The position numbers were made by a program, and so were the translations under genes. Shown one piece after another: positions 9,444-54,371 of a stretch of 64,000 bases of DNA. The stretch spans positions 62,001 through 126,000 of IMG/VR virus record IMGVR_UViG_3300037010_003311. One strand, given 5' to 3'. Each line of letters opens with the position of its first letter. Within the stretch, counting starts at the first letter, position 1. The notes beneath the pieces are model-generated. The model was not told where the DNA came from, did not search any database, and was given only the letters and a program-made list of their open reading frames with translations.

Positions 9444-10064
9444 ATGAAATGGATAATTGATAAAAGTTTTAGTTTTTGTTACGGTCATCGGGTTCATAAC
9501 CAAAGACTGGATACTAAGTTTACTGAGTCAGGAGATGCGTGTTTAGCATGTAGACACCTGCATGGCCATGAGGGTCTAGTAAAAGTATTTTTAACTGGAC
9601 CATCGAGTAATGTTAAAACTACAGGAATGGTTACAGATTTTAAACATCTAGGCTGGTTTAAAAATTTTATTGATGATACGCTTGATCATAAATTCATTAT
9701 GGATTTACGAGATCCATTATTCCCATCAGAATTTCCGCTAGTTTGTACACCAACTGGCAAATTAGTACTTGACCGGGTGCATATAATGGACCAAGGGTTT
9801 ATGATTCCAGATCTAACATATATTAAAAATATTATTAATAATGATGAAGTTCTAAAATCGCAAGCGGAAATTGATGCTATTTTTGAAAAATATGAGGGTG
9901 CAGTATTTGTCGATTTCGTACCAACTTCCGAAAATCTTGCAGCCTGGTTATTAAAAGTATGTCAGGAAAAAATGAAAGGTTTAACCGATGTTCAAGTAGT
10001 AGCGGTTGAGTATTGGGAAACTCCAAAATCACATTGTCGGGTACAAGCCACGGACTTAATCTAA
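9444..10064 (+). CDS. queD: 6-carboxy-tetrahydropterin synthase (QueD/PTPS family)
   Basis: FCYGHRV, CRHLHGHEG, MVTDF, LDHKF, PTSENLA, YWETPKSHC. Confidence 0.92.
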   Translation: MKWIIDKSFSFCYGHRVHNQRLDTKFTESGDACLACRHLHGHEGLVKVFLTGPSSNVKTTGMVTDFKHLGWFKNFIDDTLDHKFIMDLRDPLFPSEFPLVCTPTGKLVLDRVHIMDQGFMIPDLTYIKNIINNDEVLKSQAEIDAIFEKYEGAVFVDFVPTSENLAAWLLKVCQEKMKGLTDVQVVAVEYWETPKSHCRVQATDLI

Positions 10065-15064: not shown

Positions 15065-15460
15065 ATGATACCAGTTTCAAAATTACTTGGCCCTATTAAG
15101 GATGAAAAAACTATGGAAATTAGGGAAACCTATGATCCAGAATGTGCTCACTATATAGTTGTGAATAAAAAATCAAATCATGGTTATAATGTAAAATTTA
15201 TTACCGATAAACCAAACAATAGTATTACCCCAACCTGTAATGTTAAGGTTTCGTGTAATTGTGATAATTTTCAATTTATGTATGCGTATGTATTATATAA
15301 AAATGATGGTTTATATAATCCCCATCGTTTAGTACTGACACCACCAGTTGAGAAAAATCCAAATATGATTATTGGAGCGTGTAAGCATGTAAAATTAGCC
15401 CTCTATAGAAAAATGACTAATAATGTACAAAAACTTGCAACTACGGATGGGGATATCTAA
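15065..15460 (+). CDS. SWIM zinc-finger protein
   Basis: VSCNCDNF...ACKHV (CxC...CxH). Confidence 0.75.
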   Translation: MIPVSKLLGPIKDEKTMEIRETYDPECAHYIVVNKKSNHGYNVKFITDKPNNSITPTCNVKVSCNCDNFQFMYAYVLYKNDGLYNPHRLVLTPPVEKNPNMIIGACKHVKLALYRKMTNNVQKLATTDGDI

Positions 15461-16782
15461 TGGCAATAAAAATAGATTTTACTGAATTTACTTTGGATCT
15501 ACCAGAAGTCAAAGATGCTTCTATTTATAAAACTGGTACTACTAATCACCAGTTTTCGGAAACCGGATTATATTCCGAACAGATTTTTGGTCCATTAAAA
15601 AATTATAAGTGTAGTTGTGGAAACGTAGTATCTAAAATAAATGCTGGTATACGGTGTGAAATATGTAATGTACTTTGTGAATCAGATAAATTACGAAATA
15701 CCCAATTTGCTAGAATAGAATTACCAAAAGGTATTTTTATTATTCTACCTACACTTATAAAAAATTTACATGATATCTTTGGACAGAATCCAATTAAAAG
15801 TATTATGGATAAAGCGCAGTATCAACATAATTGTGACAGACCTTATTATTTTTTAAATAACTTTTCTAAATTAGTAAAGATTCCAGAAAAGGATAAAGAT
15901 AAAGATAACTATCTAAAAGATTATCCAGTTTATGATATATCTTCTTTACATAGATTATTTCAATATCTTAGAGATGAGACTGATGCTTTAGATTCTAGAA
16001 TTTCAAAAAAATATCTAGATTATGTTTTTGTAGATTATGTTTTAGTGCTACCAGTTAATAGTAGACCGATTGTAAAGATTACAAATGAAAAAAGTAATGT
16101 TCATCCAATTACAGAAAAGTATGCGGAAATATTAAAAAATAAGAGCAATAGTCTTGTTGATGACTTTCATGAAATCAATGAAGAGATGTTTGGTGCAACT
16201 GTTTATAAATATCAAAATAGTGTTAATCAGTTATACGATATAATTTTGCAGAAAAACTTTCAGCAGAAAGAAAGCGTGAGTCGTGATTACATGATGGGTA
16301 AAATTATTGAACATTCCGGCCGTTTTGTTATTGTGCCAAATCCAATTCTAAAACCATATCAAATAGGTTTACAATCTCACGCTATCAAAGAGATAAATGT
16401 CCCGGAAATTAAACGATTCATTTATCAAAAATATGCTCAAAACTCAAGTGATGAAAAGATTATGGATTATCTAATAAATATAGATTCTCATAATTCATTT
16501 AGTTCAGTATTTAATATATCTGATGATTTACTAAAAGAATTTTTGGCAGAACAAGCCAAGAATTTAATTTATGTTTGTGAACGCCCACCTGTGTTATGGA
16601 AGTATAACGTTACCGCCTTTTTTCTAGGTTTAGTAAATTGGTCTGAAAAAGATGTTACTAGAGTTATGGTACCATTTACTTCAGTTGTAAAGAAAATAAT
16701 ATCTAAATTCACTAAACCAGACGCGAAGAAAATGAATTATAGAAAATCAATTAAAAGTGTTTCTGTAAATTTTGGTAAGTAG
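15460..16782 (+). CDS. rpoC: Multisubunit RNA polymerase beta' N-terminal piece
   Basis: GLYSEQIFGP, CSCG/CEIC zinc site, VLPVNSRP, MGKIIEHSGRFVI, ERPPVLW. Confidence 0.92.
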   Translation: MAIKIDFTEFTLDLPEVKDASIYKTGTTNHQFSETGLYSEQIFGPLKNYKCSCGNVVSKINAGIRCEICNVLCESDKLRNTQFARIELPKGIFIILPTLIKNLHDIFGQNPIKSIMDKAQYQHNCDRPYYFLNNFSKLVKIPEKDKDKDNYLKDYPVYDISSLHRLFQYLRDETDALDSRISKKYLDYVFVDYVLVLPVNSRPIVKITNEKSNVHPITEKYAEILKNKSNSLVDDFHEINEEMFGATVYKYQNSVNQLYDIILQKNFQQKESVSRDYMMGKIIEHSGRFVIVPNPILKPYQIGLQSHAIKEINVPEIKRFIYQKYAQNSSDEKIMDYLINIDSHNSFSSVFNISDDLLKEFLAEQAKNLIYVCERPPVLWKYNVTAFFLGLVNWSEKDVTRVMVPFTSVVKKIISKFTKPDAKKMNYRKSIKSVSVNFGK

Positions 16783-16863
16783 ATTACAATATTGTATCTA
16801 AGTAGTTAAACGGCTCCAAGAGCTAAACCAAAAACCTATAAAGGCATTAAATGGAAATTTTAA
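16690..16863 (+). pseudogene. Decayed NUMOD1/IENR1-type homing-endonuclease tail at the beta' split
   Basis: The beta'N frame reads KKIISKF...RKSIKSVSVNFGK*ITILYLSS*TAPRAKPKTYKGIKWKF*, resembling NUMOD1 (SI.EA...G....KT.KG..WK) with two internal stops. Confidence 0.5.
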
Positions 16864-18740
16864 ACAATATGGTCATGCATTTAAATAGTTTAAATGCAAA
16901 ACGCTTTAACAGTGACTATGATGGTGATGGTCTTGGGTGTTACTCTTTACATAGTACCCAAGCTAAAAAAGAAGCAAGGCGATATATGACGCCTATATCA
17001 AATATCCAACATGAACACAATCTCGAAATGGTGGATACGCTAGAGCATGAAAGTATTCAAGCGGCATACATGCTTTCGCTTAAGGGATGGAAAAATTTCG
17101 ATTCAAATAAAATCGAATTAACTTTACAAAACATAAGCGAATTCCAAGCAGATATAAATACAGTAATTAAAACTCCAAATATAGCAGTAAGGCTTATAGA
17201 TGAAGATATAGTATTACCATATAATTCTGTTCTAATTAACGCATCATTCGATATAGAAGAGTTAATATATACTGATAGTAGATTATTGTATAAAAAGAAT
17301 TTACTAGAACTGATTAAGCTTTTATACGACTTTGTAGAGAATGCTAAATTTCATGATAAATTACATAACTTCAATAAAGTACTACTTGAATGTAGTACAG
17401 TTGTTAGTTATTGTAATACAAGTTTTGAACTGAATCACTTTGCGGTGAATCATAAAGCAATTGAGGATTTCAAAAAAACACTTATAAATGAACCATTTAC
17501 TGGTTTCCATCAAAACCAAATGCTATTTGATACACATGTTAAAAATCTTATTTGTCATGATGAAGATAATATTCTAACGAATGTATTCAATTCTGGAGCA
17601 AGGATCAAAAATGTACAGTTGTTAAAAGCTGCTAGTAATAATGGTATCCCAACTGATATTAATGGTAGAGCATTTAAGCATAATATTAAAAACTCATTAC
17701 TTGATGGATTAACCGAAGAAGAGTTCTTTATGACTGGGGATAGTGCAAGACTAGCCTTAGCTCAAAGGCAAGATTCTATTCCAAAGGGTGGTGAACTTCA
17801 ACGGAAGATATATTTTACAACTGGATTCTTGCAACTCAATAATATTGCAGATTGTGGATCAGAAAAATATTTTACAATAGTGGTTAGTGATAGACATCAT
17901 TTAGCTTCCTTATATGGAAGATGGTATATTACTGATGATAATCCAAAACTACGTTTCGTTCGTTTAGATGATACTAAATTAATTGGTACGGAAATTAAAG
18001 TTCGTTCCCCAATTTATTGTAAGTCTGGTGATTATGCTATTTGTGATAGATGCTTTGGTTCTAAAAAACCAGATTCAGATAACATTGGTGCAGCTATTGG
18101 ATCATATATTGCGGAAAGTATCATTCAGTCAATTCTTAGAACTCACCACTTTAGTGGAGCTTTCATTACTGAGATTAAAAAAGAATTCAATGAAATTATT
18201 GAATCGTTACAATTCGAATCACCTAACATTATAAAAGGTAGTCCAGAAAATATTGATCGGTATAAACAATATCTTTTAGATAATTACTATAAGGAAGAAG
18301 ATTTTACTATAACCAAAACTAGTAAAAACTGCTACGAAATTGATGTTATTAATTTACCATTAAATGATGACTCTGTTAAAAAACTACAGGTTATTACTTC
18401 ATATATTGATAAGAATCGAGATAGTGATAATTTGATTTCACCAGAAGAGATATATAAATTTCTTAAAAATGAAATCATTATGCCTAATGATATTTTGAGT
18501 ATATATGTTGAATTAATTATTGGTATTCTATTTTACGATGAAGATGGTATTATGATTAGATATTCTGATAAAGAGATTAACTTCCAGTTGGCTTTAAAGA
18601 ATGTTATTTCGCATATTGATCCAAGAATGTCTTTCTTCTATGGATTCAACGATGGTAAGATTAGTGATTGTTATGATGCCGAAACCGAGGGAACGGTCCT
18701 AAAACATATGTATCAGGATTTAACTGATATCTATTATTAA
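16851..18740 (+). CDS. rpoC: Multisubunit RNA polymerase beta' C-terminal piece (catalytic)
   Basis: RFNSDYDGD (NADFDGD equivalent), bridge helix GELQRKI, DCGS, RSPIYC...CDRCFG, trigger loop IAESIIQSILRTHH. Confidence 0.95.
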   Translation: MEILNNMVMHLNSLNAKRFNSDYDGDGLGCYSLHSTQAKKEARRYMTPISNIQHEHNLEMVDTLEHESIQAAYMLSLKGWKNFDSNKIELTLQNISEFQADINTVIKTPNIAVRLIDEDIVLPYNSVLINASFDIEELIYTDSRLLYKKNLLELIKLLYDFVENAKFHDKLHNFNKVLLECSTVVSYCNTSFELNHFAVNHKAIEDFKKTLINEPFTGFHQNQMLFDTHVKNLICHDEDNILTNVFNSGARIKNVQLLKAASNNGIPTDINGRAFKHNIKNSLLDGLTEEEFFMTGDSARLALAQRQDSIPKGGELQRKIYFTTGFLQLNNIADCGSEKYFTIVVSDRHHLASLYGRWYITDDNPKLRFVRLDDTKLIGTEIKVRSPIYCKSGDYAICDRCFGSKKPDSDNIGAAIGSYIAESIIQSILRTHHFSGAFITEIKKEFNEIIESLQFESPNIIKGSPENIDRYKQYLLDNYYKEEDFTITKTSKNCYEIDVINLPLNDDSVKKLQVITSYIDKNRDSDNLISPEEIYKFLKNEIIMPNDILSIYVELIIGILFYDEDGIMIRYSDKEINFQLALKNVISHIDPRMSFFYGFNDGKISDCYDAETEGTVLKHMYQDLTDIYY

Positions 18741-19025: not shown

Positions 19026-20300
19026 ATGAATTTAATACCAACTAAAGTGAGAACCGTATCCAATTCGGAATGGTACGCTATCCCAGATTTTAGAAAGGAT
19101 GATCATTATAAAGTACTAGATATATTAAACGATATGTTTAAAAAGTTATCTAATTATTTTAACATCACTTATAAAATTGATTTTATAAATAAACTTGATG
19201 ATGATAAAACTTACTTGAGCGAGTATGCTACATATATGAACTTGATAGTAATAAATCTTGCAGTAAATGGTGTACCAGAGAAACCTATAAAAATCCGTTA
19301 TCCAGCTTTAGTGAATGATAACTTCTTTATTATGAATGGTAGTATCTATGTACCACTTATGTTTTTAGAAAGAAGTCCGATCGATAGAATAAATGAAATA
19401 GATGAAACAACTGGTAAAAATATTGGCCGTATATTATTAAATATTTTACCATCATTTAATATTACATTTGATTTCGTGAATGAACGTATTCTTTATCGTG
19501 GTAAAAAAGCTATTACGACTAATATGTTTTTTAGTCTTATTTATAATAGGCCCGAAGATCAGGAGTATGTTAAATACCTCATTGATAATGGTATTATGAC
19601 AGATTTCTTTGATTCTGTTTCGGAAGAGGATATGAAAACATTTATTAAATCCTTCGATCTTAAATCACTAAACATTTTAAAAAATGAAGAACCAATCAGC
19701 ATTGTAGATTTCTTCGATGAGTTATTATTACTTGATTACTTTAAAGGAATGTTTGAAAAAATCTATGGTGTTAGTACCATTCGGGAGATCTTAAAAATTA
19801 TAGTCAATTACTATTTGAATGATACATTTATTGATATGTCTGATCTTAGAAATAGGCGTATAGTTGTTAATGAATATCTTATTAATCCTATATTTGAATA
19901 CTATTTAAGATTCCTGAGAAATATTACGGAGAAACATGACCCAGATGCGAAAAAAGTTTTTAGTCCTACTATGAATCCACAAGTTGTTATAACTAGTGGT
20001 TTTAGAGGTATGATGCATGGTGGTTCACATTATAATATTTCATTACCATATCCAACACCATTACTTTATAAGGTGTCTCAAAGCATTTATATTGTTGGGG
20101 AAAAGGTACCAAGAAGTTGGACGAGTAATCATCCAAGTGCTTATGGTAAAATATGCCCAATTTCGGTATCTGCTCAAAACATGGGAGAAAACCTAGTATT
20201 TACTAGTGATGTTCGTTTAGATAAATATGGCCTAATAGAAGGTACTAAAGCTATTTTAGTTGAGCGACAAGAGGATGATGTAGATGCACCCAAAACTTAA
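19026..20300 (+). CDS. rpoB: Multisubunit RNA polymerase beta N-terminal piece
   Basis: FFIMNGSIYVPLMFLERSP and HPSAYGKICPI match FIINGTERV..QLHRSP and HPTHYGRICPI. Confidence 0.85.
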   Translation: MNLIPTKVRTVSNSEWYAIPDFRKDDHYKVLDILNDMFKKLSNYFNITYKIDFINKLDDDKTYLSEYATYMNLIVINLAVNGVPEKPIKIRYPALVNDNFFIMNGSIYVPLMFLERSPIDRINEIDETTGKNIGRILLNILPSFNITFDFVNERILYRGKKAITTNMFFSLIYNRPEDQEYVKYLIDNGIMTDFFDSVSEEDMKTFIKSFDLKSLNILKNEEPISIVDFFDELLLLDYFKGMFEKIYGVSTIREILKIIVNYYLNDTFIDMSDLRNRRIVVNEYLINPIFEYYLRFLRNITEKHDPDAKKVFSPTMNPQVVITSGFRGMMHGGSHYNISLPYPTPLLYKVSQSIYIVGEKVPRSWTSNHPSAYGKICPISVSAQNMGENLVFTSDVRLDKYGLIEGTKAILVERQEDDVDAPKT

Positions 20301-21165
20301 AAATATTTTAGAATTTAGTTATAAGTATAGTAATATTTATGACTGTTCTACGCCAAGTTTTGGCCCTTATGATTATCAGCTTTTAGAAAAAAAATTATCT
20401 GAAAATATGGATAACTATCGCGATGTGTATACTATGATGGCAAATACACTTTTTGGTGATGGCGAAAATATAAATATTTTAGAAGTTTTAAATTATGCTG
20501 TTATGCATAGTGCTCTCCAATATAATTTTTGGTATGGTTCTCCAGATTATAAACCATTTAATAGTGGTATAATAACCGAGTATATAATTGGAAAAGATTA
20601 CCAGAAACTAGAGGATATTATAAAAAATAGTGTTATTGGTTTTATACCAGATCGATTAGAAACCTTAAATAATTTAAGAACTTTATTGAGCAATGGTTAT
20701 TTAGAATCGCGGTTTTTCGCAAAAAATTTTAATCTCCACGATTTTATAGATTTTTTATTAGAACAAAAATGTTTTAATAATGATCCACTGTTTAAAAAAG
20801 GTATCTTAGTTATAATGGAGGTTAGACGTATACTTGACCATTGGCCAAATAAGGATGATAGTATTTATCGAAAGCTGGATAAAACTTTCGACACCGTAGA
20901 AATATCGACTTATCCAATCCCGGCCGATTACCGAATCCCGGAATACTTAGCAAGCGTCGGAGCTCAAACCGAGACTCTAAATAAATATGTAATCGAAAAT
21001 AGTATTGAAGAAATAGGCATTCGAACAACTTCAATACGTTTAATAAACGAATTACATCAAATAAGTAAACTTCCAACCTATGTCCTAGATTCATTAATCT
21101 TTATAGATCATAAAGTTAATAAATCAGAATCCAAACATCATCTTTGTATGACAACTAACTATTAA
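20284..21165 (+). CDS. Queuosine-salvage Qng1/DUF2419-like N-glycosylase/hydrolase
   Basis: ALQYNFW, DPLFKKGIL, PADYRIPEYL, EEIGIRTTSI, VLDSLIF and C-terminal HHLCMTTNY follow the order and spacing of the DUF2419 motifs (NFcFW, KRAQ, ADYrvP, EveIR, iD..lW, hHrtr..yY). Confidence 0.75.
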   Translation: MHPKLKNILEFSYKYSNIYDCSTPSFGPYDYQLLEKKLSENMDNYRDVYTMMANTLFGDGENINILEVLNYAVMHSALQYNFWYGSPDYKPFNSGIITEYIIGKDYQKLEDIIKNSVIGFIPDRLETLNNLRTLLSNGYLESRFFAKNFNLHDFIDFLLEQKCFNNDPLFKKGILVIMEVRRILDHWPNKDDSIYRKLDKTFDTVEISTYPIPADYRIPEYLASVGAQTETLNKYVIENSIEEIGIRTTSIRLINELHQISKLPTYVLDSLIFIDHKVNKSESKHHLCMTTNY

Positions 21166-21179
21166 AAAGGAAAATAATT

Positions 21180-21851
21180 ATGGAAAACACACAAGCATCA
21201 CAACAATTCACAGGAACATTTCGTTATGGTTTAGTAGCAATTTCAAAAGCTGGAAAAGAATATTTTACAGGAGTTGTAGGCTTTACTAATGCCTCAGGTG
21301 GTCAAGATCAATACAAAGTTACAAGCTTTGATAAAAATACAGTTGCTTATGCTAAACAGTATGGAGCATATAATGAAAATAAAATGGCTCTTAGTGGTAA
21401 AAATGTTACACTAACAAGTAAATCTGGTTTCGCTTTAAGTTCTTATTCTAATAAATATGAACTACTTTTTGAAACCATGGATATTGAGGGTTGCCCATTC
21501 CAAGCTCCAGCTGAAGCACCACAAGGTTATTCTGCTCCAACAATGGGTATCCAAGCTCCAACTGTAGGTATGGGATTGCCACAGCCAGGCATGATGGCCG
21601 CTCCACAAATGGCTGCTCCACAAATGGCTGGGATGGCTGCTCCACAAATGCCAGGTATGATGGCTGCTCCACAAATGCCAGGTATGATGGCTACGCCAGG
21701 TATGATGACTGCACCAGTTGAAATGCAACAACCGGCTCCTATGCAACAACCTGCGGCAATGACTGCTCCAGTTGAAATGCAACAACCTGCGGCAATGACT
21801 GCTCCAGCTGTACCAGGTATGATGCCTGCACCACAAATTCCAGGGATGTAA
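21180..21851 (+). CDS. Putative ssDNA-binding (OB-fold-like) protein with M/A/P/Q-rich repeat tail
   Basis: About 105-aa beta-rich aromatic N-domain then low-complexity tail; strong RBS. Confidence 0.45.
   Translation: MENTQASQQFTGTFRYGLVAISKAGKEYFTGVVGFTNASGGQDQYKVTSFDKNTVAYAKQYGAYNENKMALSGKNVTLTSKSGFALSSYSNKYELLFETMDIEGCPFQAPAEAPQGYSAPTMGIQAPTVGMGLPQPGMMAAPQMAAPQMAGMAAPQMPGMMAAPQMPGMMATPGMMTAPVEMQQPAPMQQPAAMTAPVEMQQPAAMTAPAVPGMMPAPQIPGM
21591..21810 (+). repeat. Coding tandem repeats (MAAPQ x4; MTAPVEMQQPA x2)
   Basis: GCTCCACAAATG repeated four times; GCACCAGTTGAAATGCAACAACC-type unit twice. Confidence 0.9.
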
Positions 21852-21930: not shown

Positions 21931-23907
21931 ATGAGTATTGTTAGTCCCCAAATTGAGGTATTTGAACCATTTTCCTCTAACACTGATGCTAGTAGAACAA
22001 ACATGAGTTCAAAGCAGTTACTACAGGTTATTGTTGCTGAAGGTACCGAGATACCATACATTCTAAATAAAAACTATAAAGTTATGACGACCGTTAATTC
22101 ACCATTTGTAAAAATTGCTGAAGAAGATGGAGTAGTAATCTACAACAATAATAATCTTATTGGATATGTATATAAAGAAACAAAACGAATTACCTTTGAC
22201 CATTTACCAGATACTAAGAAAATGGTAAACAATAGCCTAACGCTGAAATATATAACCAAAGAGCCTAGATTTAAAAAGGGTGACGTCCTTTGGGATTATA
22301 CTAATCAAGATCCTGAAACGAATATGCCAAGAACTGGATATAGAGCAAACATTATGTATTCTAGCTTCTTTGGTTTTAATGCGGATGATGCAATGGTTAT
22401 ATCTGAAAGTTTTGCTGAGAGATGCCGCATAGATTATTCGGAAAAAATATTTATGCCTATAACACCGGAAATTAAATACATTATGAATGAAGGTAGGAAT
22501 AAGTATTTAACTGGACCAGATGAAATTACACCAAATAGTTTTTATATTCAATACAATAAAATCGATACATCTAAACATTTTTTAACCGAATTAATAAATG
22601 TAAATAATTCTGTTTCAAAATCAGCTAGTAAAATGGTTGAAGCGATTGCTGGTGGAAAAATTTTATCTTTAAAAATTCATAAGCTTTCAGATTTATCTTT
22701 CAATGAATTAAAAGCTAGATATGTTTATACTCCAACGTTAATTGATGAGATTGAGGTATTGTATAATGATCAAGCTGGAATTCATAAACATATTCTGGAT
22801 TCATTGCGGTTGTATATGCAAGAAGATGACGCTGAAGCTATTCATTCAAAACTGATTAAAAACTATTATTCAGTAACTGAGTTCAATGATATATTTATGA
22901 CGGATTTAGCGGATAATTATAAGATTGATAAAGACTCGATTGATATAGTTATCGAACTTGAAATTCATAAAGATCTACCAACTTGTACGGGTGATAAATT
23001 TACCAATCTATTTGCTGGTAAAGGAGTTGTCTCATTAATCATTCCTGACGAATTAATGCCGAGAGATGAAGCTAATGATCCAGCTGATATCATCTTTAAT
23101 CCACTTGGATTATTTGGTCGTAATAACTGGGGAACAGTTTTTGAAATGGCTTTAGCTAAGATAATAGAAGATGTTGAAGAAAACATTAATAATCGAACTC
23201 AAACCCTTAGACGATTAAAGTTTATTAATAAGCATTTTATTCGTCTATACGATGAAGACTACTATCATAACGTAGAACAACTTATCGAAAACTTTGATGA
23301 GCGGTTTGATGAGTTTAAACATCAAGTACAAACCAAAGGGTTTTTTCTATATGTTGAAAATTTTCCAAAAATAGCATATAATGATTTCATTAATGATTTT
23401 GTAAATCCATATGAGGCAACATTTAATGTCAATATAACTAAGAAAGAGAAAACTATCTTTTCAAAAGAGTTGATGCAATTTATGCGAGATAAAGGATTTA
23501 AAACAACTTTGTTTAACTCAGCTCAGGATATTGAACAAGATGTTTATTTTGGTCGTAATTATTATATGAAACTTTTCCATACTGCCTGGTCAAAATATAA
23601 TGCCGTTGGTTTTAGTTCAAGCTACTCACGTATAACTGGACAACCAGCACGGGGTCGTAAAAACAAAGGTGGTTTACATATCAGTTGGCAAACTTTTGCG
23701 GCATTACTTGGTTATAAAACTAAGAATGCAGTTCTAAAAGAATTCTACTCTATTAAAGCGGATGTTGCTATAGCTGATAAAAAGATTTTCATTAATAGTT
23801 TTATAAACAGTGGTGAATACATACTAAAAAACAAGTATTTCTCACAAACTAAGCAAACTTTGACTAATGCTTTGAAAATGATAGGGATGATTTTTAAGAG
23901 TGATTGA
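21931..23907 (+). CDS. rpoB: Multisubunit RNA polymerase beta C-terminal piece
   Basis: PFSSNTDASRTNMSSKQ, GFNADDAMVISES, GDKFTNLFAGKGVVS, DIIFNPLG, YMKLFH, YSRITGQP.RGR..KGG. Confidence 0.93.
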   Translation: MSIVSPQIEVFEPFSSNTDASRTNMSSKQLLQVIVAEGTEIPYILNKNYKVMTTVNSPFVKIAEEDGVVIYNNNNLIGYVYKETKRITFDHLPDTKKMVNNSLTLKYITKEPRFKKGDVLWDYTNQDPETNMPRTGYRANIMYSSFFGFNADDAMVISESFAERCRIDYSEKIFMPITPEIKYIMNEGRNKYLTGPDEITPNSFYIQYNKIDTSKHFLTELINVNNSVSKSASKMVEAIAGGKILSLKIHKLSDLSFNELKARYVYTPTLIDEIEVLYNDQAGIHKHILDSLRLYMQEDDAEAIHSKLIKNYYSVTEFNDIFMTDLADNYKIDKDSIDIVIELEIHKDLPTCTGDKFTNLFAGKGVVSLIIPDELMPRDEANDPADIIFNPLGLFGRNNWGTVFEMALAKIIEDVEENINNRTQTLRRLKFINKHFIRLYDEDYYHNVEQLIENFDERFDEFKHQVQTKGFFLYVENFPKIAYNDFINDFVNPYEATFNVNITKKEKTIFSKELMQFMRDKGFKTTLFNSAQDIEQDVYFGRNYYMKLFHTAWSKYNAVGFSSSYSRITGQPARGRKNKGGLHISWQTFAALLGYKTKNAVLKEFYSIKADVAIADKKIFINSFINSGEYILKNKYFSQTKQTLTNALKMIGMIFKSD

Positions 23908-25039
23908 TTTAACTGGGTTGAAATTGTTATACCCCGAAGCTGAACCGCGGCAAATTAAAGCCGCGGTTAAATACCAAGAAAAATTTTCTTTAACTTTGGA
24001 AAATTTAAAATGCTTAAACCCAGATTGTAACAGAATGCGAAAATGGGGAGATACAGTTTCTGGTTTTTATTACACTTGCTCAAAAGAATGTTTTAATAAA
24101 ACTAAATCGATTAGAGAAAATAAAAAGTTAGAAGCCAGAATCAAAACTAGTTTATCAAAATATGGAATTAAGAATGCGGCCAGTTTACAAACTATTAAAG
24201 AACTTAAAATCAAAAATAGTAGATTAAATTATAATTGTGATAGTCCAAATACCCTAGAATCTAAAATTTTAAAAACTAAAAAAACTTGTATTGATAAATA
24301 TGGTACAAGTTGTACGGCTCAGAGAATAGAAATTAAAACGATCATTATGAAAAATAATGTTAAACATAATGTTGACTTTTCGGCTCAACGGCATATTACT
24401 AATTTAAAATATTGGGGGAATAAAAACTTTTGGATTGATAATTTTATAACAAACGATAATCATTTTGATTATATAAAATGTATGTTATATTTTAATTGTA
24501 AACAACCAACTGTTCATAATCAAATTAAAAAACTTGGTATAAAATATACCAAGACCGCAGCAACTAGTTTACAAGAACAAGCTATAATACCATATTTAGA
24601 AAGCTTAGGTGTATCGGCGGTAGCAAATGAACGGGCCATAATACCAAATCAGGAACTAGATATTTGGATACCTAGCTTAAAACTTGCAATAGAATGGAAT
24701 GGTAGCTATTGGCATAGTTATCATGAAACCATAGGGACAGGACCTAAGCAGCTAGATTATGACTTTTGTAAGTACCGGCACCAACGAAAGGCTTTAGCCT
24801 GCTTGGAGGTGGGTATTCGGTTGCTTCAGTTATATGAAGATATGAACTTAAGCAATTGGAAAGAGCAAATAGATAAATTTATAGTTTATGATCCAGACAC
24901 TGGGATAGATATATATGACTTGGATTCTGGTTGCTATCCACTTAACCCAGATTTCGAAACACTAGAACCCGAAAGCCGAATGGTGCTCAAAAACCGCACT
25001 TTATGGAACGCAGGTAAAATTAAAATTAAAAGGAAATAA
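23900..25039 (+). mobile_element. Free-standing Hef-like (PD-(D/E)xK-type) homing endonuclease gene
   Basis: ELDIWIPSLKLAIEWNGSYWHS; shares WxNKNFWI...C..YF.C.Q.T.H.Q.KKL.I with 58525-59928; overlaps the rpoB C-piece stop. Confidence 0.75.
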
Positions 25040-25041
25040 AA

Positions 25042-26319
25042 ATGCAAGATATATTTGATACAAAAAATGAAATATATGCTATGAAACGTAAAGCTCTGGG
25101 TGGAGCAATTAACCAGCTTTTCAATACTGCTAAAACAGATAGTAAAATTGTAGGGCCTTTAGTAAAGTTAGTCGCACCACTTGGTTTAAATCTTTCGGTA
25201 TACGAGGATGAAGATCCAACTAAAACACTTTGGGAAAACATTGCTAAAAACCCATCGCTCAAGAATCTAAATAAGGTTATGAAAGATCTTCCATTAATCA
25301 ATGTTGTTAAAATTGGTAATATTATTTCTGAACTTTTAGTTGGTAAAAGAGATGCTACTAAAGCATTAGCCAATCGTACAGTTGCAGTAAACTACTTTAT
25401 TGCTGCAGTTACTGAGTTAAATGAATACTTCGCAGCTATTGGGGTTGATTATATTTTACCATTGCCGAATTTAACTAAGCGATATAAACGCCCAGTTGGT
25501 GTGGATGAAGCAATACGTGTAAAACCAAAAAGGAAAAAGAAAAGCTTACTTGGTGAAGCAGTACCAAATGATACAGTTACTTTAGAAACTACAATTGATC
25601 CGATTGTTGAAGCTAACCCAGAAGTTGTTATCCCAAAAATTAGTAGTCGCAACAGGGTTACAAATAATAAAAAACGTGAGCCGATAACTATAAAACAAAA
25701 AGTTCAAGTTGAAAAAATAAATATAGACCCAGTAATGGTTATCACAGATGAACCTTTACCAGAGATAGTGAAAGAAGAGACTATTTCGAAATCTATAGAT
25801 AATGGTAAGATAATAGAGGAACCACAAAGCAATAGAATTATTTTATTGAATTCATTTTTAGTTGGTAAAAAAGAGACTGGTGAACCAGCTAGAACAATGA
25901 GTTCATTAGCTAAAAAATGTGAATCAGATGAAGAGTTCTTTAATAAAATTACGACAACCAGTTACCGTAAACATATTACTAAAAAGTTCTTTGATTTACA
26001 TAAAGATTTATTTTTATCTTATAACCCAAATTCCGAGGAAATAATCTTTAGGAAATCTAAGAAAGATAAAACTGAATCAAAGGAAATGATTCATCCAAAT
26101 CAGGGTAGTTTTGAATTTGAACCAGATGATGAAACCAAAAAAATGATCGATCAATTGAAACCATTAAATGCTGAATATATGGCACCATTAGTAAATAAGG
26201 TAAGAGGAACCTATGATTTATTATATATAATAGATGACTACCCATTCATCATAGAAGAACCAGTAACCTTTAAAGAAAAAGTAAAAACTGTTTTTTCTAA
26301 AATTTTTAGATTAAAGTAG
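25042..26319 (+). CDS. Hypothetical protein
   Basis: 425 aa, RBS AAAGGA. Confidence 0.8.
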   Translation: MQDIFDTKNEIYAMKRKALGGAINQLFNTAKTDSKIVGPLVKLVAPLGLNLSVYEDEDPTKTLWENIAKNPSLKNLNKVMKDLPLINVVKIGNIISELLVGKRDATKALANRTVAVNYFIAAVTELNEYFAAIGVDYILPLPNLTKRYKRPVGVDEAIRVKPKRKKKSLLGEAVPNDTVTLETTIDPIVEANPEVVIPKISSRNRVTNNKKREPITIKQKVQVEKINIDPVMVITDEPLPEIVKEETISKSIDNGKIIEEPQSNRIILLNSFLVGKKETGEPARTMSSLAKKCESDEEFFNKITTTSYRKHITKKFFDLHKDLFLSYNPNSEEIIFRKSKKDKTESKEMIHPNQGSFEFEPDDETKKMIDQLKPLNAEYMAPLVNKVRGTYDLLYIIDDYPFIIEEPVTFKEKVKTVFSKIFRLK

Positions 26320-28834: not shown

Positions 28835-30271
28835 ATGTGTAGTTTTATGGTAATAAATGGTCCAATTGAAAAGGTAGTAAAATTTACTCCAGATCATATT
28901 AGCTTCGATGATGTTATCCAAGCATTACGTGTTAAAGGCAACCTGAATGATGATATTGATTTATTTATGTATAATCATAATCTGGGGGAATTACTACAAC
29001 TTACTGCTGCAGAATTACGAGCCACCAATGAACCAAAATTTGAATATATGGGTTCGGCTTATGAAAAGTTTACTAGAACACCAGAAGATTACGAACCGGA
29101 TGATATAGTTACTTTAGTAGCATTTAGTCGGTTGGCACCAGAGATGGAAGTTGATGCGAAACAAAACACCTTGTCACAACCATATTTAAATACCAAGTAT
29201 AAAACAATTACTATGGTACATGGGACTATCCCGAAAGCCGAAGAGTTCGTACCAGAGGTACAGGTGGATACCGATATTTTTATGCACCGTAGTTTTCAGG
29301 ATTGTATCAATTATACTGAACAGGTTGGTGGTAAGATTTCAGCGGTGCAAATACCTATGACTAAACTTAGTACTATATTATGGTATGATAATGGCTTAGG
29401 TAGATTCGAATATAAATCAATGGATGGAAAAGTTTGGATTGGTACAAACATTAATTTATTTAATCATTTTTATTATTGGGCTAAATCTTTTATGCTACAA
29501 CCTGCCCCTTATATACAACTAGTTTTTCCAAAAACTTTAATTCTTGCCAAGTCGCGTATAATTTCACTTTTTAGTGGTGGGTTAGATATAACTTGTAGTA
29601 CACTAAATGTAATAGAAACTAAACTTAAACAACGCTCACAATTAAAAAGTGTGGACTTATGGTACTTTGATTGGGGCACAAGAGCTTCAGCCGAAGAACA
29701 AGCAGCTGGGCAACGCTTTAAAGATAAATTGGAGAAAGATTTCGCTACCAACGGTAGCACAGCTACCGTTAATTATGAAGTTATCCCAACAGAAGGTATG
29801 TTTAGGAATATATTACAAGCATGTGATACAACAGTTCGGTTAACCGATAAAGATGCAACCGGGGCTGGACATCATGAAGCGGAAGCTGCAATTTCATATG
29901 TACCATACCGCAACCAGTTCCTATTAACTCTTGCGGCAGCTAAAGCCGAACAACTTTATCCAGGGGAAAATGTAACTATAGTTATAGGTGCAAATCTTAG
30001 TGAAGGAATGGTTTATTTAGATAATAGTGAATCATTTGTAGATGCTATTAATAAAACTATTAAGGTTGGTGGACAAAGAACTTATAATTTCGAAGTAGTT
30101 GCCCCATTCGTAAATAGAACTAAAACCGATATGGTAGCTGAATGCTTAAAACGTGGGTATGACCTTAGTACAGCGTTTAGTTGTTATTTTCCGGTTGATG
30201 GTAAAGAATGTGGTGTATGTGGTAGCTGTTTACTTAAACAAAGGGCGTTAGAAAGAGGAGGAAATAAATAA
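28835..30271 (+). CDS. queC: Class II glutamine amidotransferase-QueC fusion (GAT-QueC)
   Basis: N-terminal Met-Cys (Ntn nucleophile); LFSGGLD, SYVPYRN, PFVNRTK, TAFSCY...CGVCGSCLLK. Confidence 0.9.
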   Translation: MCSFMVINGPIEKVVKFTPDHISFDDVIQALRVKGNLNDDIDLFMYNHNLGELLQLTAAELRATNEPKFEYMGSAYEKFTRTPEDYEPDDIVTLVAFSRLAPEMEVDAKQNTLSQPYLNTKYKTITMVHGTIPKAEEFVPEVQVDTDIFMHRSFQDCINYTEQVGGKISAVQIPMTKLSTILWYDNGLGRFEYKSMDGKVWIGTNINLFNHFYYWAKSFMLQPAPYIQLVFPKTLILAKSRIISLFSGGLDITCSTLNVIETKLKQRSQLKSVDLWYFDWGTRASAEEQAAGQRFKDKLEKDFATNGSTATVNYEVIPTEGMFRNILQACDTTVRLTDKDATGAGHHEAEAAISYVPYRNQFLLTLAAAKAEQLYPGENVTIVIGANLSEGMVYLDNSESFVDAINKTIKVGGQRTYNFEVVAPFVNRTKTDMVAECLKRGYDLSTAFSCYFPVDGKECGVCGSCLLKQRALERGGNK

Positions 30272-49530: not shown

Positions 49531-50241
49531 TTAAGCCTTGATATTTGAAATATTATCTATTGATTTCATTTTTACTTTACTATTGATTGGTACCACCACT
49601 TCTGGTTTAGCTAAACTCTCGACCGTAAAGTAATTTGGATTATTATCTTCCGATCTTTTTTCAAGATATTTTACTTCTAGTTTTCCAGAAGGATTCTCCA
49701 CACAGGTAGTGGTTTTCATATACTCTTGATACTCTTCATCCCAAGGGAATATAAGCCAATTATCATCAGATATGGTTTCAGATGAATAAAAAGTACCATT
49801 TAAAAAATCTGGTTCCCATGCCATTCCAGTCGGCTTATAAAAAACGGTATATGTATCAATTATTATCGTTTCTTTTAATACAGTTTTTAGATATTCGACT
49901 ACAGCTGTCAGAGTTGCACCAGTATCATAAATATCATCAACTACTAGAATTCGTCTAACATTATTTAATCTACTAATGTTTGATTTATCGAGATTTTGTA
50001 CAGTTACCTTATCCTTTACGCTATTCGTTTTCGGATTAAATAATTCAGCGTTTATTGGTATAAGCTTATTTATTTTCATTTTATATGAAATTAAAGTAGC
50101 TGGAATATTACCACCTCTTTGTATCGGTATGATATAATCATATTCAAATGCTGCATCAGAGCATTGTGTAATAAAATTATCAACATGCTCTATTATATCA
50201 CCAAATGAAATTATCGTTTTATCGTCTACGGCCCAACTCAT
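49531..50241 (-). CDS. Type I phosphoribosyltransferase (Gpt/Hpt-like)
   Basis: IIPIQRGG, ILVVDDIYDTGATL, WLIFPWD. Confidence 0.92.
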   Translation of the reverse strand: MSWAVDDKTIISFGDIIEHVDNFITQCSDAAFEYDYIIPIQRGGNIPATLISYKMKINKLIPINAELFNPKTNSVKDKVTVQNLDKSNISRLNNVRRILVVDDIYDTGATLTAVVEYLKTVLKETIIIDTYTVFYKPTGMAWEPDFLNGTFYSSETISDDNWLIFPWDEEYQEYMKTTTCVENPSGKLEVKYLEKRSEDNNPNYFTVESLAKPEVVVPINSKVKMKSIDNISNIKA

Positions 50242-53924: not shown

Positions 53925-54371
53925 TTAGTTAGATACTGGTGTAGTATCTACTGGTGCAGTTGTAGCATCTTCGGCAGCACTAGCTGCTTCATTAGCCGCA
54001 ACTACCTCTTCTGAGACTGGTACATCCGAATCATATAGTACATCTTCAGCAGGCTGTTGTGCACTCTCAAACTCATTTTCTTTAATAAGATTAAGCTCTA
54101 ATAGGAATTCTAAAATTTCTTTAGATATTGCAGCACGAATCAATTCATCATCAAAATCAGCAGGTGAAAGATATGTTGTTTGGATAGTTGGAACTACTTC
54201 TTCACCCTCAACCGGTTCTTTTGGCACTTGAGAGATGATTTCAATATATAGATTACTTTGTTCAAGAGATTGTACTAGTTTATAATGGTATTGTAAACCA
54301 TTAGCTAGAAGGTTAGTTGGGTGAATCAATTTTGGAAATGCTATAATATTTGTACTAACAACTGCGCTCAT
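53925..54371 (-). CDS. Hypothetical protein with acidic tail
   Basis: 148 aa, TAATG coupling to upstream gene. Confidence 0.75.
   Translation of the reverse strand: MSAVVSTNIIAFPKLIHPTNLLANGLQYHYKLVQSLEQSNLYIEIISQVPKEPVEGEEVVPTIQTTYLSPADFDDELIRAAISKEILEFLLELNLIKENEFESAQQPAEDVLYDSDVPVSEEVVAANEAASAAEDATTAPVDTTPVSN

What the first reader, a model, noticed from the sequence alone, without database searches (positions are those of the whole stretch)
20284..21165. Phage-encoded Qng1/DUF2419-like queuosine nucleotide glycosylase embedded among RNAP subunit genes
Seen: all main DUF2419 motifs in order, including the Lys of the KRAQ-equivalent and the Asp of ADY; the start overlaps the betaN stop. 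Established: Qng1 releases queuine from queuosine-5'-monophosphate and is best known in eukaryotes and some bacteria. I am not aware of a characterised phage member. Inference: it could harvest deazaguanine bases from degraded host tRNA, keep modified NMPs away from the phage RNAP, or neutralise a deazaguanine-based defence signal.
Basis: partly seen in the sequence, partly recalled or inferred. Interest (0 to 1): 0.8.

Follow-up and report, generated by a model that had tools for sequence, protein, structure and literature searches.

The report
Virus-type Qng1-like nucleotide glycosidase in jumbo phage
A 226-kb uncultivated jumbo phage carries, inside its RNA-polymerase gene block, a divergent relative of the queuine-salvage enzyme Qng1 that keeps the catalytic core but not the queuosine pocket, and belongs to a virus-restricted subfamily often found beside 7-deazaguanine synthesis genes, suggesting an undescribed nucleotide-level step in phage deazaguanine metabolism.

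Summary
The ORF is real: 20284-21165 (+), 293 aa, with a Shine-Dalgarno-like site, and its start overlaps the stop of the upstream gene by 17 nt. The protein alone misses Pfam PF10343. Profile and fold evidence nevertheless place it in the Qng1/DUF2419 superfamily: hhalign probability 100% (E 8e-43) to viral PF10343 proteins, a family profile that hits StQng1 at 7e-32, and Foldseek top-10 hits that are all Qng1. The catalytic Asp, HhH Lys, ribose-stacking Phe/Tyr, guanine-face Asp, His and C-terminal Tyr are invariant. The queuosine side-chain pocket and proton relay are replaced. It is therefore a Qng1-like N-glycosidase, probably not a queuosine-specific one. It sits in a monophyletic clade found only between RNAP beta-N and beta-C in related jumbo-phage contigs. 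That clade is nested in a subfamily seen in 35 IMG/VR contigs, in 4 MAG contigs among GTDB species genomes, and in no GenBank phage. About 13 of 46 loci have FolE/QueD/QueE/QueC within 10 kb, and several have a purine PRTase. This phage encodes FolE, QueE, QueD, a Gat-QueC-like protein and a PRTase. No DpdA was recognised in about 102 kb. Best reading: a 7-deazaguanine nucleoside-5'-monophosphate glycosidase in the phage's own deazaguanine pathway. The substrate is unproven.

The parts
20284..21165 (+). Qng1/DUF2419-like N-glycosidase gene (293 aa), virus-type subfamily, RNAP-embedded clade
   Evidence: ORF; hhalign to viral PF10343 group prob 100%, E 8e-43; AF2 pLDDT 80.5, pTM 0.83; Foldseek top-10 all Qng1 structures; Atlas TM 0.78 to a Q_salvage cluster
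20270..20275 (+). Shine-Dalgarno-like AGAGGA, 8 nt before the ATG, inside the end of the upstream gene
   Evidence: read directly from the sequence
20506..20538 (+). HSALQYNFWYG motif: S76 and Q79 replace StQng1 D69 and N72; F82 = F75 (ribose stacking); W83 = W76
   Evidence: HMM-position mapping against the StQng1 alignment
20791..20820 (+). FKKGILVIME: K171 = HhH Lys K199; L175 = I203 (base sandwich); E179 replaces D207
   Evidence: residue roles from PMC9881137
20914..20943 (+). PIPADYRIPE: D215 = catalytic D231; Y216 = Y232; R217 = phosphate ligand K233
   Evidence: A1 profile aligns ADY to ADY of 7uk3/7u07
21085..21102 (+). LDSLIF: D269 = D298 (binds the guanine face); S270 replaces W299; F273 replaces W302
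21139..21162 (+). C-terminal H286-x-CMTT-x-Y293: H286 = H316; terminal Tyr carboxylate = Y323
   Evidence: Tyr is the last residue in all 142 family sequences examined; role from PMC9881137
15460..16782 (+). RNAP beta-prime, N-terminal piece
   Evidence: Rpb1_1 E 2.3e-6; PHROG RNAP subunit families
16851..18740 (+). RNAP beta-prime, C-terminal piece (starts with the NSDYDGD catalytic motif)
   Evidence: Rpb1_2 E 6.3e-5; phrog_3015 E 3e-33
19026..20300 (+). probable RNAP beta, N-terminal piece; its stop overlaps the Qng1-like start
   Evidence: syntenic in 6 contigs; profile hits only RNAP beta chains, weakly (7ye1_C, AR9 7s00_c, E 0.4)
21180..21851 (+). conserved small ORF with a Pro/Gln/Met/Ala-rich repetitive tail, between the Qng1-like gene and beta-C
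   Evidence: ORF; N-terminal part conserved in L001, L003, L004, L005
21931..23907 (+). RNAP beta, C-terminal piece
   Evidence: Rpb2_6 E 1.8e-23
9444..10064 (+). QueD (CPH4 synthase) with the CxxxHGH motif; associated pathway gene
   Evidence: PTPS E 4e-25; motif read; DpdL would have LxxxHRH
28835..30271 (+). Gat-QueC-like fusion: about 240-aa N-terminal domain starting Met-Cys, plus a QueC domain (242-474)
   Evidence: QueC E 3e-29; MCS start as in JenP2 Gat-QueC; best phage hits are Gat-QueC
49531..50241 (-). purine phosphoribosyltransferase-like protein (XPRT/HGPRT type, PRPP motif VVDDIYDTGAT)
   Evidence: NCBIfam XPRT E 8.6e-14; sequence; homologous PRTases lie near Qng1-like genes in L032, L035, L036 and L045

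Best explanation
The gene encodes an active, divergent member of the Qng1/DUF2419 HhH-type N-glycosidase superfamily. It belongs to a virus-restricted subfamily. It most likely binds a free nucleoside 5'-monophosphate carrying a guanine-like 7-deazapurine base. It would cleave the N-glycosidic bond with Asp215, as Qng1 does with D231, releasing the free base and ribose-5-phosphate. Lys171 and the C-terminal Tyr293 carboxylate hold the ribose hydroxyls. The substrate is probably not queuosine-5'-MP. It is more likely the nucleotide of the deazaguanine that the phage makes with FolE, QueD, QueE and a Gat-QueC-like enzyme, meaning a preQ0- or G+-type base. Together with the phage purine PRTase (base + PRPP -> NMP), it would control the balance between free base and nucleotide. 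That would return mis-ribosylated or recycled deazaguanine to the free-base pool used for DNA modification, and keep deazaguanine ribonucleotides out of the NTP pool. SHOWN: homology, fold, conservation of the catalytic, ribose and guanine-face residues, loss of the Q-specific pocket, gene context and distribution. INFERRED: catalytic activity, a mononucleotide rather than polymer substrate, a deazaguanine base, and the physiological role.
For: Homology and fold: A1 profile gives 241 hits, 130/138 sampled in PF10343. hhalign A1 vs viral PF10343 set is 100%, E 8e-43. The A2 profile hits StQng1 at 7e-32 and HsQNG1 at 2.6e-22. Foldseek top-10 hits are all Qng1, TM 0.5-0.62, with AGOG only at E 0.6. 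Atlas structural TM is 0.78/0.82. Active site: K171, D215, Y216, E243, R247, D269, H286 and terminal Y293 are invariant across 13 clade members and about 130 relatives. Tyr is the last residue in 142/142. In StQng1 the terminal carboxylate contacts the ribose 3'-OH and a C-terminal tag kills activity, which argues for a free nucleotide. Basic residues sit at or near the phosphate-ligand positions: R217, K90 and K276/277. Q-pocket residues are replaced. Pathway context in this genome: QueD, Gat-QueC-like, PRTase, and FolE and QueE in L057. Across viruses, FolE/QueD/QueE/QueC lie within 10 kb in about 13 of 46 loci. Examples are L010 (FolE-QueD-...-QueC-Qng1-like) and L035 (PRTase-QueC-QueD-...-Qng1-like-QueE). 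For comparison, QueC hits occur in 129 of 50,697 GenBank phage records.
Against: No biochemical data exist for any viral member. The single sequence fails the Pfam PF10343 model. The C-terminal 17 residues and part of the N-terminal lobe are modelled at low confidence, so pocket geometry is unknown. The de novo pathway already yields free bases, so the need for a glycosidase is not obvious, and a glycosidase plus a PRTase could form a futile cycle. No DpdA/TGT that would use the free base was recognised in about 102 kb of the genome or near any viral homologue. DpdA2-4 are too divergent for the methods used. Most loci (about 33 of 46) show no Que gene within 10 kb, and some sit in general nucleotide-metabolism clusters instead (L012: IMPDH/GMPR-family gene, dCMP deaminase, thymidylate synthase).
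Confidence: 0.5

Rival explanations
1. It is a nucleotide-level base-exchange enzyme (N-ribosyl-5-phosphate transglycosylase). It uses the retaining, possibly covalent Asp-ribosyl mechanism proposed for Qng1 to swap guanine on GMP/dGMP for the phage-made deazaguanine. Together with the PRTase, this would feed modified nucleotides to the phage DNA polymerase without DpdA.
For: Qng1 chemistry is proposed to retain configuration through a D231-linked intermediate in a closed, dehydrated pocket, which is the situation that favours transfer over hydrolysis. No DpdA was found in about 102 kb of this genome or within 10 kb of any viral homologue. PRTase genes recur next to Que and Qng1-like genes. 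The field has left open a modified-dGTP route or 'undetected 2'-deoxyribosyltransferases'.
Against: Characterised Qng1 enzymes are hydrolases. DpdA3/DpdA4 are only detectable by HHpred-level methods, and about 125 kb of the genome was not examined. The 2023 survey concluded that all deazaguanine phages encode a DpdA.
Confidence: 0.12
2. It is a true Qng1 orthologue that frees queuine from queuosine-5'-MP produced when host tRNA is degraded.
For: Same superfamily, fold and catalytic residues. RecJ-like, RNase H and RNase T nucleases are encoded nearby.
Against: The cyclopentenediol pocket (W48, Y93, W94, W299) and the D69-N72-D207 relay to the Q secondary amine are not conserved. By my own rough estimate (background knowledge, not computed here), the tRNA Q content of a cell is small compared with the guanines in a burst of 226-kb genomes. 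The phage has its own de novo pathway.
Confidence: 0.1
3. It is a canonical purine nucleotide (GMP/dGMP) nucleosidase used to reshape guanine nucleotide pools during infection, unrelated to deazaguanines.
For: D269 recognises the guanine Watson-Crick face, which G and deazaG share. Some homologues sit in general nucleotide-metabolism clusters without Que genes (L012). The window also carries RNR, ThyX, a dUTPase-like gene and a PRTase.
Against: StQng1 and HsQNG1 do not cleave GMP. The co-localisation with Que genes is well above the rough background.
Confidence: 0.1
4. It acts on polymers, as an HhH DNA or RNA glycosylase. Examples would be excising a base from DNA, or from transcripts made by the neighbouring RNAP.
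For: Weak Pfam AGOG hits (E 0.048; best 0.0069 among clade members). HhH ancestry is shared with DNA glycosylases.
Against: Foldseek and profile scores favour Qng1 by many orders of magnitude. The invariant C-terminal Tyr carboxylate occupies the 3'-OH side of the ribose in Qng1. Qng1 has no activity on tRNA.
Confidence: 0.05
5. It is a co-opted, possibly non-catalytic accessory subunit of the phage multisubunit RNAP, or an anti-defence enzyme that destroys a deazaguanine-based signal.
For: It holds a fixed position between beta-N and beta-C in all six clade contigs, with overlapping or abutting reading frames.
Against: All catalytic residues are invariant. About 40 other viral homologues have no RNAP gene within 10 kb, so the linkage is lineage-specific synteny. 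No free deazaguanine nucleotide immune signal is known to me (background knowledge).
Confidence: 0.05

Closest known systems
Qng1/QNG1 (DUF2419, PF10343; StQng1 PDB 7U07/7UK3, human QNG1 7UGK): queuosine-5'-monophosphate N-glycosidase
   Same: Same two-lobe HhH-derived fold (Foldseek prob 1.0, TM up to 0.62). The catalytic Asp lies in an ADY motif. The HhH Lys, ribose-stacking Phe/Tyr, guanine-face Asp, His and C-terminal Tyr carboxylate are all conserved.
   Different: Only about 12-14% identity. The protein fails the Pfam model on its own. The cyclopentenediol pocket aromatics are lost (W48/Y93/W94 variable; W299->S/G; W302->F). The proton relay D69/N72/D207 is replaced by S/Q/E. It is viral, sits in an RNAP operon, and is linked to de novo deazaguanine synthesis rather than to q salvage with TGT and transporters.
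Virus-type PF10343 proteins from metagenomes (ADYQIPK signature; e.g. P0017, P0033, L010-L047), uncharacterised
   Same: Nearest relatives (hhalign E 8e-43). They share the invariant core and the loss of Q-pocket residues, and many lie next to FolE/QueD/QueE/QueC or PRTase genes.
   Different: The RNAP-embedded clade is a long-branched monophyletic offshoot (100/99 support). It has ADYRIPE instead of ADYQIPK, Q79 for N72, E179, and C288 for T318. Only this clade is linked to RNAP genes.
AGOG / HhH-GPD DNA glycosylases (PF09171; Tga-AGOG 7OU3; Ogg1)
   Same: HhH-type Lys and Asp. Weak sequence hits occur over residues 210-276.
   Different: Scores are below threshold (13.5 vs 26.1 bits). Foldseek gives E 0.6 and TM 0.32. 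The Qng1-type insertions and the C-terminal tail point to a mononucleotide substrate rather than DNA.
Phage 7-deazaguanine DNA-modification clusters (FolE-QueD-QueE-QueC/Gat-QueC-DpdA; phage 9g, JenP2, R7M)
   Same: This phage has FolE, QueE, QueD and a Gat-QueC-like fusion, partly beside DNA polymerase B pieces, as in 9g-like phages.
   Different: The genes are scattered over about 45 kb rather than clustered. No DpdA1-type gene was found. A Qng1-like gene and a purine PRTase are present, and neither is part of the described systems.
ToyH-type preQ0 phosphoribosyltransferase step of toyocamycin biosynthesis (recalled from background knowledge, not tested here)
   Same: It is a precedent for converting a free 7-deazaguanine base into a ribonucleotide with a PRTase. 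This is a lead for why PRTase genes accompany Que genes here.
   Different: It belongs to a secondary-metabolite pathway in Streptomyces, and no Qng1-like partner is known there. Homology of the phage PRTase to ToyH was not examined.

Membership tests
Qng1/DUF2419 superfamily (Pfam PF10343 Q_salvage), homology level | Direct match of the protein to the PF10343 HMM above the gathering score | tested here: not met
   No PF10343 hit at E<=10 for the window protein. Only 3 of 11 clade members hit weakly, best E 0.0036. P0012 and P0013 carry faint or weak precomputed hits.
Qng1/DUF2419 superfamily (Pfam PF10343 Q_salvage), homology level | Profile-level homology to PF10343 members and to solved Qng1 proteins over the full length | tested here: met
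   The A1 profile gives 241 hits, and 130/138 sampled match PF10343. hhalign is 100%, E 8e-43 over 257 columns. The A2 profile hits 7uk3 at E 7e-32 (residues 13-326) and 7ugk at 2.6e-22.
Qng1/DUF2419 superfamily (Pfam PF10343 Q_salvage), homology level | Qng1-type two-lobe HhH fold | tested here: met
   AF2 model pLDDT 80.5, pTM 0.83. The Foldseek PDB top-10 hits are all Qng1 entries, prob 1.0. Atlas TM is 0.78/0.82 to a Q_salvage cluster.
Qng1/DUF2419 superfamily (Pfam PF10343 Q_salvage), homology level | Catalytic Asp (D231, ADY) and HhH Lys (K199) | tested here: met
   D215 and K171 are invariant in the clade and in about 130 relatives.
Qng1/DUF2419 superfamily (Pfam PF10343 Q_salvage), homology level | C-terminal Tyr carboxylate (Y323) with H316/E267, and guanine-face Asp (D298) | tested here: met
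   Y293 is the last residue. H286, E243 and D269 are invariant. Tyr is terminal in 142/142 sequences.
Qng1 sensu stricto (queuosine-5'-MP N-glycosidase orthologue) | Aromatic cyclopentenediol pocket (W48, Y93, W94, W299; P46, H53) | tested here: not met
   The equivalents are T50, Y100 (variable in the clade), I101, S270 and G60. W299 is never Trp in the viral set. The mapping is by HMM alignment, which is weakest in the N-terminal lobe.
Qng1 sensu stricto (queuosine-5'-MP N-glycosidase orthologue) | Strictly conserved D69-N72-D207 H-bond relay to the substrate's secondary amine | tested here: not met
   S76, Q79 and E179, each invariant within the clade.
Qng1 sensu stricto (queuosine-5'-MP N-glycosidase orthologue) | 5'-phosphate ligands (R80, K233, Q306) | tested here: inconclusive
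   R217 replaces K233. K90 aligns two positions from R80. K277 (K276 in other clade members) lies near Q306. Basic residues are available, but the register is uncertain.
Qng1 sensu stricto (queuosine-5'-MP N-glycosidase orthologue) | Releases queuine from Q-5'MP; inactive on GMP, Q-3'MP and tRNA | not testable with these tools
   Requires enzyme assays (properties).
AGOG / HhH-GPD DNA glycosylases | Significant match to PF09171/PF00730, or best structural match to a DNA glycosylase | tested here: not met
   AGOG 13.5 bits against a cutoff of 26.1. Foldseek AGOG E 0.6, TM 0.32, ranked below ten Qng1 chains.
Phage 7-deazaguanine DNA-modification system (as defined in PMC6884629 and PMC10516641) | preQ0-pathway genes FolE, QueD, QueE, QueC/Gat-QueC in the same genome | tested here: met
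   QueD 9444-10064 with CxxxHGH. QueC fusion 28835-30271. FolE and a radical-SAM QueE lie 10-14 kb upstream of the window (L057).
Phage 7-deazaguanine DNA-modification system (as defined in PMC6884629 and PMC10516641) | A DpdA-family DNA transglycosylase | tested here: inconclusive
   No TGT Pfam hit and no DpdA1-HMM hit in contig 33.9-135.6 kb. About 125 kb was not examined, and DpdA2-4 are undetectable by these methods. A candidate 426-aa neighbour of QueE gave an unusable model (pLDDT 42).
Phage 7-deazaguanine DNA-modification system (as defined in PMC6884629 and PMC10516641) | Modified deoxynucleoside present in virion DNA | not testable with these tools
   Uncultivated phage; needs LC-MS of DNA.

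The most novel reading that the evidence does not exclude
Viral Qng1-like enzymes, paired with viral purine PRTases, could form a nucleotide-level entry route for 7-deazaguanines. The route would be base exchange on (d)GMP, or a PRTase/glycosidase-controlled deazaguanine nucleotide pool. The modified base would then reach phage DNA through the polymerase, independently of DpdA. This would contradict the current view that all phage 7-deazaguanine modifications are post-replicative.
Probability: 0.12. Interest if true: 0.85.

Novelty: new variant of a known kind. Interest (0 to 1): 0.65.

Why it matters
Qng1 is known as the eukaryotic and bacterial enzyme that frees the micronutrient queuine. 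No viral member has been described, and none is detectable in about 50,000 GenBank phages or in the BFVD viral structure set. This finding shows a virus-restricted branch of the family that keeps the chemistry but drops the queuosine pocket, and that repeatedly sits next to preQ0-pathway and PRTase genes. That adds a candidate new component to phage 7-deazaguanine DNA-modification systems. It also makes an open question testable: whether some phages handle deazaguanines as nucleotides rather than only as free bases exchanged into DNA by DpdA. In addition, it gives enzymologists a natural series of Qng1 variants whose pocket residues (D207 -> E/Q/M, W299 -> small) may encode specificity for preQ0, G+ and related bases.

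Tried and rejected
These searches gave nothing useful:
- Single-sequence searches: Pfam gave only a sub-threshold AGOG hit, PHROGs nothing useful, PDB phmmer nothing.
- tblastn of five diverse viral family members against GenBank phages found no match.
- BFVD Foldseek found no viral Qng1-like model; the best hit was an EndoIII at E 0.13.

The AGOG/DNA-glycosylase reading was rejected on relative scores.

A programmed frameshift fusion with beta-N was rejected. The overlap is not conserved: L001 has a 13-nt gap and L002 a 1-nt gap.

The search for DpdA did not succeed:
- Pfam scans of window ORFs.
- PDB phmmer on the 414- and 425-aa ORFs.
- Atlas on the 414-aa ORF, which is a PolB polymerase domain, and on the 285-aa ORF, which was uninformative.
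- A DpdA1 HMM built from R7M, JenP2 and Nicole72, with no hits.
- Walking about 28 kb upstream and 10 kb downstream of the window.
- An AF2 model of the 426-aa neighbour of QueE, too poor (pLDDT 42) to search with, so the last fold search was not spent.

Other points:
- The search for related loci with the 138-sequence alignment failed for lack of a conserved stretch, and was redone with 27 sequences.
- No tRNA genes are in the window.
- No convincing + strand terminator lies between beta-prime and beta-C.
- The sigma-70 promoter scan is below the shuffled expectation and is uninformative for a phage with its own RNAP.
- A correlation between the residue at the D207 position and the type of QueC nearby (E with Gat-QueC; Q or F with plain QueC) rests on too few independent loci to count as evidence.
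Full report
OBSERVATION. The window holds an ORF at exactly 20284..21165 (+), 293 aa. Its ATG lies 17 nt inside the preceding 424-aa ORF, which ends with TAA at 20298-20300. An AGAGGA Shine-Dalgarno-like site sits 8 nt upstream of the ATG. The window is contig positions 62001-126000 of IMGVR_UViG_3300037010_003311, a 226,657-nt viral contig. It has about 30% G+C and carries a split multisubunit RNAP whose beta-C piece is only 22-25% identical to those of PBS1/AR9-type jumbo phages.

FAMILY ASSIGNMENT. The single sequence does not match PF10343. It gives only a sub-threshold AGOG hit at E 0.048, and nothing in PDB by phmmer. A profile of the 11 homologues (A1) ranks Qng1/DUF2419 chains first in PDB, with ADY aligned to ADY, but only at E 0.15.

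The decisive link comes through intermediates:
- The A1 profile found 241 proteins at E<=1e-3 among 1.84 billion representatives.
- 130 of 138 sampled match PF10343, best 1.9e-25.
- A profile of these (A2) hits StQng1 at 7.2e-32 over its whole length and human QNG1 at 2.6e-22.
- hhalign between the clade (A1) and 27 viral PF10343 proteins (A4) gives probability 100%, E 8e-43, over 257 columns.

Structure agrees. The AlphaFold2 model has pLDDT 80.5 and pTM 0.83. Its ten best Foldseek PDB matches are all Qng1 entries (prob 1.0, TM 0.5-0.62). The first non-Qng1 glycosylase, AGOG, appears only at E 0.6. The ESM Atlas independently returns Q_salvage clusters, with feature score 0.94 and structural TM 0.78/0.82.

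ACTIVE SITE. I rebuilt the A2 HMM locally (291 positions, as). I mapped the functional residues of StQng1 described in PMC9881137 onto the phage protein and about 140 relatives.

These residues are invariant everywhere:
- K171 (= K199, the HhH Lys that holds the 2'/3'-OH).
- D215 (= D231, nucleophile or oxocarbenium stabiliser).
- Y216 (= Y232).
- E243 (= E267) and R247.
- D269 (= D298, which reads the guanine N1/N2 face).
- H286 (= H316).
- Y293 (= Y323), which is the last residue in 142 of 142 sequences.

F82 (= F75) and L175 (= I203) are also kept. In StQng1 the terminal carboxylate contacts the ribose 3'-OH, and a C-terminal tag abolishes activity. Its strict conservation here argues for an active enzyme acting on a free nucleotide rather than on a polymer. 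Basic residues lie at or near the 5'-phosphate ligand positions: R217 for K233, K90 near R80/R82, and K276/277 near Q306.

The queuosine-specific residues are not conserved. W299 becomes S or G. W302 becomes F. W48, Y93, W94 and H53 are variable. The 'strictly conserved' relay D69-N72-D207, which connects to the secondary amine of the Q side chain, is S76-Q79-E179, each invariant within the clade. The wider viral group also lacks D69, D207 and W299. The protein is thus a superfamily member with intact chemistry, but not an orthologue of the queuosine enzyme.

CONTEXT IN THIS GENOME. Upstream are beta-prime N (15460-16782), beta-prime C (16851-18740, beginning with NSDYDGD), an 87-aa ORF, and the probable beta-N (19026-20300). 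The evidence for beta-N is weak: its profile hits only RNAP beta chains, at E 0.4. Downstream are a conserved small ORF with a P/Q/M/A-rich tail (21180-21851), beta-C (21931-23907), and a homing endonuclease. No convincing + strand terminator separates these genes.

- The window encodes a QueD with the canonical CxxxHGH motif (9444-10064), so it is not the DpdL paralogue.
- It encodes a 478-aa QueC fusion (28835-30271; QueC domain E 3e-29). The N-terminal domain of about 240 aa begins Met-Cys-Ser, like the Gat-QueC of phage JenP2. Its best GenBank hits are phage Gat-QueC proteins.
- It encodes an XPRT/HGPRT-like phosphoribosyltransferase (49531-50241, - strand).
- It also carries RNR, ThyX and a dUTPase_2-family gene.
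- Walking upstream of the window found FolE and a radical-SAM QueE (L057 3914-4681 and 7844-8686). Both hit phage FolE/QueE at 1e-9 to 1e-19.

The phage therefore has the full preQ0/G+-type base pathway. No TGT/DpdA was recognised in contig 33.9-135.6 kb. This is not proof of absence, because DpdA3/4 need HHpred-level sensitivity and about 125 kb was not seen.

DISTRIBUTION.
- Six contigs (window, L001-L005) share the order beta-prime N, beta-prime C, (small ORF), beta-N, Qng1-like, small ORF, beta-C. All three loci long enough to show it have the Gat-QueC-like gene about 8 kb downstream.
- The overlap with beta-N is not conserved; L001 and L002 have gaps. These are separate proteins.
- In a maximum-likelihood tree this RNAP-embedded clade is monophyletic (100/99) on a long stem. 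It is nested in a viral branch that also has Gln at the N72 position.
- The broader subfamily, with its ADYQ[IV]P[KR] signature, was found in 35 IMG/VR contigs of up to 548 kb. It was found in only 4 MAG contigs among the representative genomes of 185,579 species.
- Five diverse members gave no tblastn hit in 50,697 GenBank phage records. BFVD has no matching viral model. The held literature has no mention of a viral Qng1/DUF2419.

Among about 46 distinct loci, 13 have FolE, QueD, QueE or QueC within 10 kb. Two examples stand out. L010 is a T4-like contig with FolE-QueD-methyltransferase-x-QueC-Qng1-like. L035/L036 have PRTase-QueC-QueD ... Qng1-like-QueE. As a rough yardstick, the same Gat-QueC query hits 129 of 50,697 GenBank phage records. 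PRTases homologous to the window's recur within 10 kb in L032, L035, L036 and L045. RNAP genes are adjacent only in the RNAP clade. Other loci sit in general nucleotide-metabolism neighbourhoods. L012 has an IMPDH/GMPR-family gene, dCMP deaminase and thymidylate synthase. L011 has PTPS, UvsX and a PF15891 deoxyribosyltransferase-like gene.

MECHANISM. The best-supported reading (confidence about 0.5) is a mononucleotide N-glycosidase for a guanine-like 7-deazapurine nucleoside 5'-monophosphate, probably carrying the base the phage itself synthesises. It would work opposite a PRTase to set the balance between free base and nucleotide. That would recover base that has been ribosylated or released from nucleic-acid turnover, and keep deazaguanine ribonucleotides away from the NTP pool.

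What is shown: homology, fold, residue conservation and loss, context, and distribution. What is inferred: activity, substrate class and physiological role.

Weak points remain. The de novo pathway already yields free base. A glycosidase plus a PRTase could be futile. No acceptor transglycosylase was found. Two thirds of the loci show no Que gene nearby.

The rivals, with their tests, are listed in the structured fields:
- Nucleotide-level base exchange feeding the polymerase (0.12). This is the most novel reading. It draws on the retaining mechanism proposed for Qng1 and the open question noted.
- True Q-5'MP salvage from host tRNA (0.10).
- A GMP/dGMP nucleosidase (0.10).
- A polymer glycosylase (0.05).
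- An RNAP accessory or anti-defence role (0.05).

COMPARISON AND NOVELTY. It works like Qng1 in its chemistry and belongs to the same superfamily. It fails two defining features of the queuosine enzyme: the Q pocket and the amine relay. It also fails the Pfam model on its own. I therefore file it as a new, virus-restricted variant of a known kind, not as Qng1 itself. The possible link to deazaguanine DNA-modification systems is new relative to the published component lists, which are FolE, QueD, QueE, QueC/Gat-QueC/ArcS, QueF, DpdA1-4 and DpdL/M/N.

LIMITS. The N-terminal-lobe residue mapping depends on an HMM alignment in a poorly conserved region. The C-terminal 17 residues are modelled with pLDDT below 50. 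The co-localisation figures lack a matched background. IMG/VR and MAG assignments are computational. Everything about substrate and role needs the assays listed under next steps.

Noticed in passing
window 8213-8815 and 8808-9428 (+): ThyX is split into two overlapping ORFs. The first matches Thy1 profile positions 2-74 and the second 55-185. This could be a frameshift, a sequencing error or a genuinely split gene, and it lies immediately upstream of QueD.
   Followed up: no
window 26924-28168 (+); L057 4722-7392 (contig about 48.4-51.1 kb): Family-B DNA polymerase appears to be in pieces about 40 kb apart. An exonuclease-domain ORF (PF03104) preceded by intein-fragment ORFs lies next to FolE and QueE. 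A polymerase-domain ORF lies just upstream of Gat-QueC. The 425-aa ORF at 25042-26319 between a homing endonuclease and the pol domain has no detectable family.
   Followed up: partly
window 21180-21851 (+): This ORF lies between the Qng1-like gene and beta-C. It has a conserved N-terminal part (found in L001, L003, L004, L005) and a long repetitive Pro/Gln/Met/Ala-rich tail (MAAPQMPGMM-type repeats) that is expanded in this phage. It might be an RNAP-associated small subunit.
   Followed up: no
window 23900-25039 (+), 58525-59928 (-); also L057 12168-13721 and L053 1-459: There are several copies of a DUF7487 / homing-endonuclease-like gene (phrog_3339 E 8e-36). One abuts the end of RNAP beta-C with a GTG start.
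   Followed up: no
window 54-629, 828-1361, 1708-2295 (+); L058 608-1258 and 3702-4451: A tandem family of beta-solenoid (YdcK/hexapeptide/bactofilin-like) paralogues. The three copies in the window are 56-58% identical to each other.
   Followed up: no
window 54371-54577 (-): A 68-aa ORF with a precomputed Hc1 (histone H1-like, PF07432) hit lies next to the dUTPase_2-family gene at 54647-55480.
   Followed up: no
L012 11848-14213: In another viral contig, the gene beside the Qng1-like ORF is an IMPDH/GMP-reductase-family gene interrupted by a Hint domain and a NUMOD3 homing endonuclease. A dGTP_diPhyd_N protein, dCMP deaminase, HIT and thymidylate synthase are nearby.
   Followed up: no
L010 7333-8840: In the T4-like contig with FolE-QueD-...-QueC-Qng1-like, a PF13489 methyltransferase and a 288-aa protein with no family sit directly upstream of QueC. 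They are candidates for a base-modifying enzyme and a divergent transglycosylase.
   Followed up: no
L057 8689-9969 (contig about 52.4-53.7 kb): A 426-aa conserved protein next to QueE has homologues only in related metagenomic contigs. It has no PDB or Pfam match, and its AF2 model is poor (pLDDT 42). Its function is unknown.
   Followed up: partly
L006/L007/L011 (contigs from JGI samples 3300037010, 3300035661, 3300035180): A second, unrelated large phage carries a virus-type Q_salvage gene next to an endolysin and a TerD/TelA/TerC cluster. In L011 it also has PTPS, UvsX, Acb1 and a PF15891 deoxyribosyltransferase-like gene. One of its contigs (L006) comes from the same sample as the window.
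   Followed up: no
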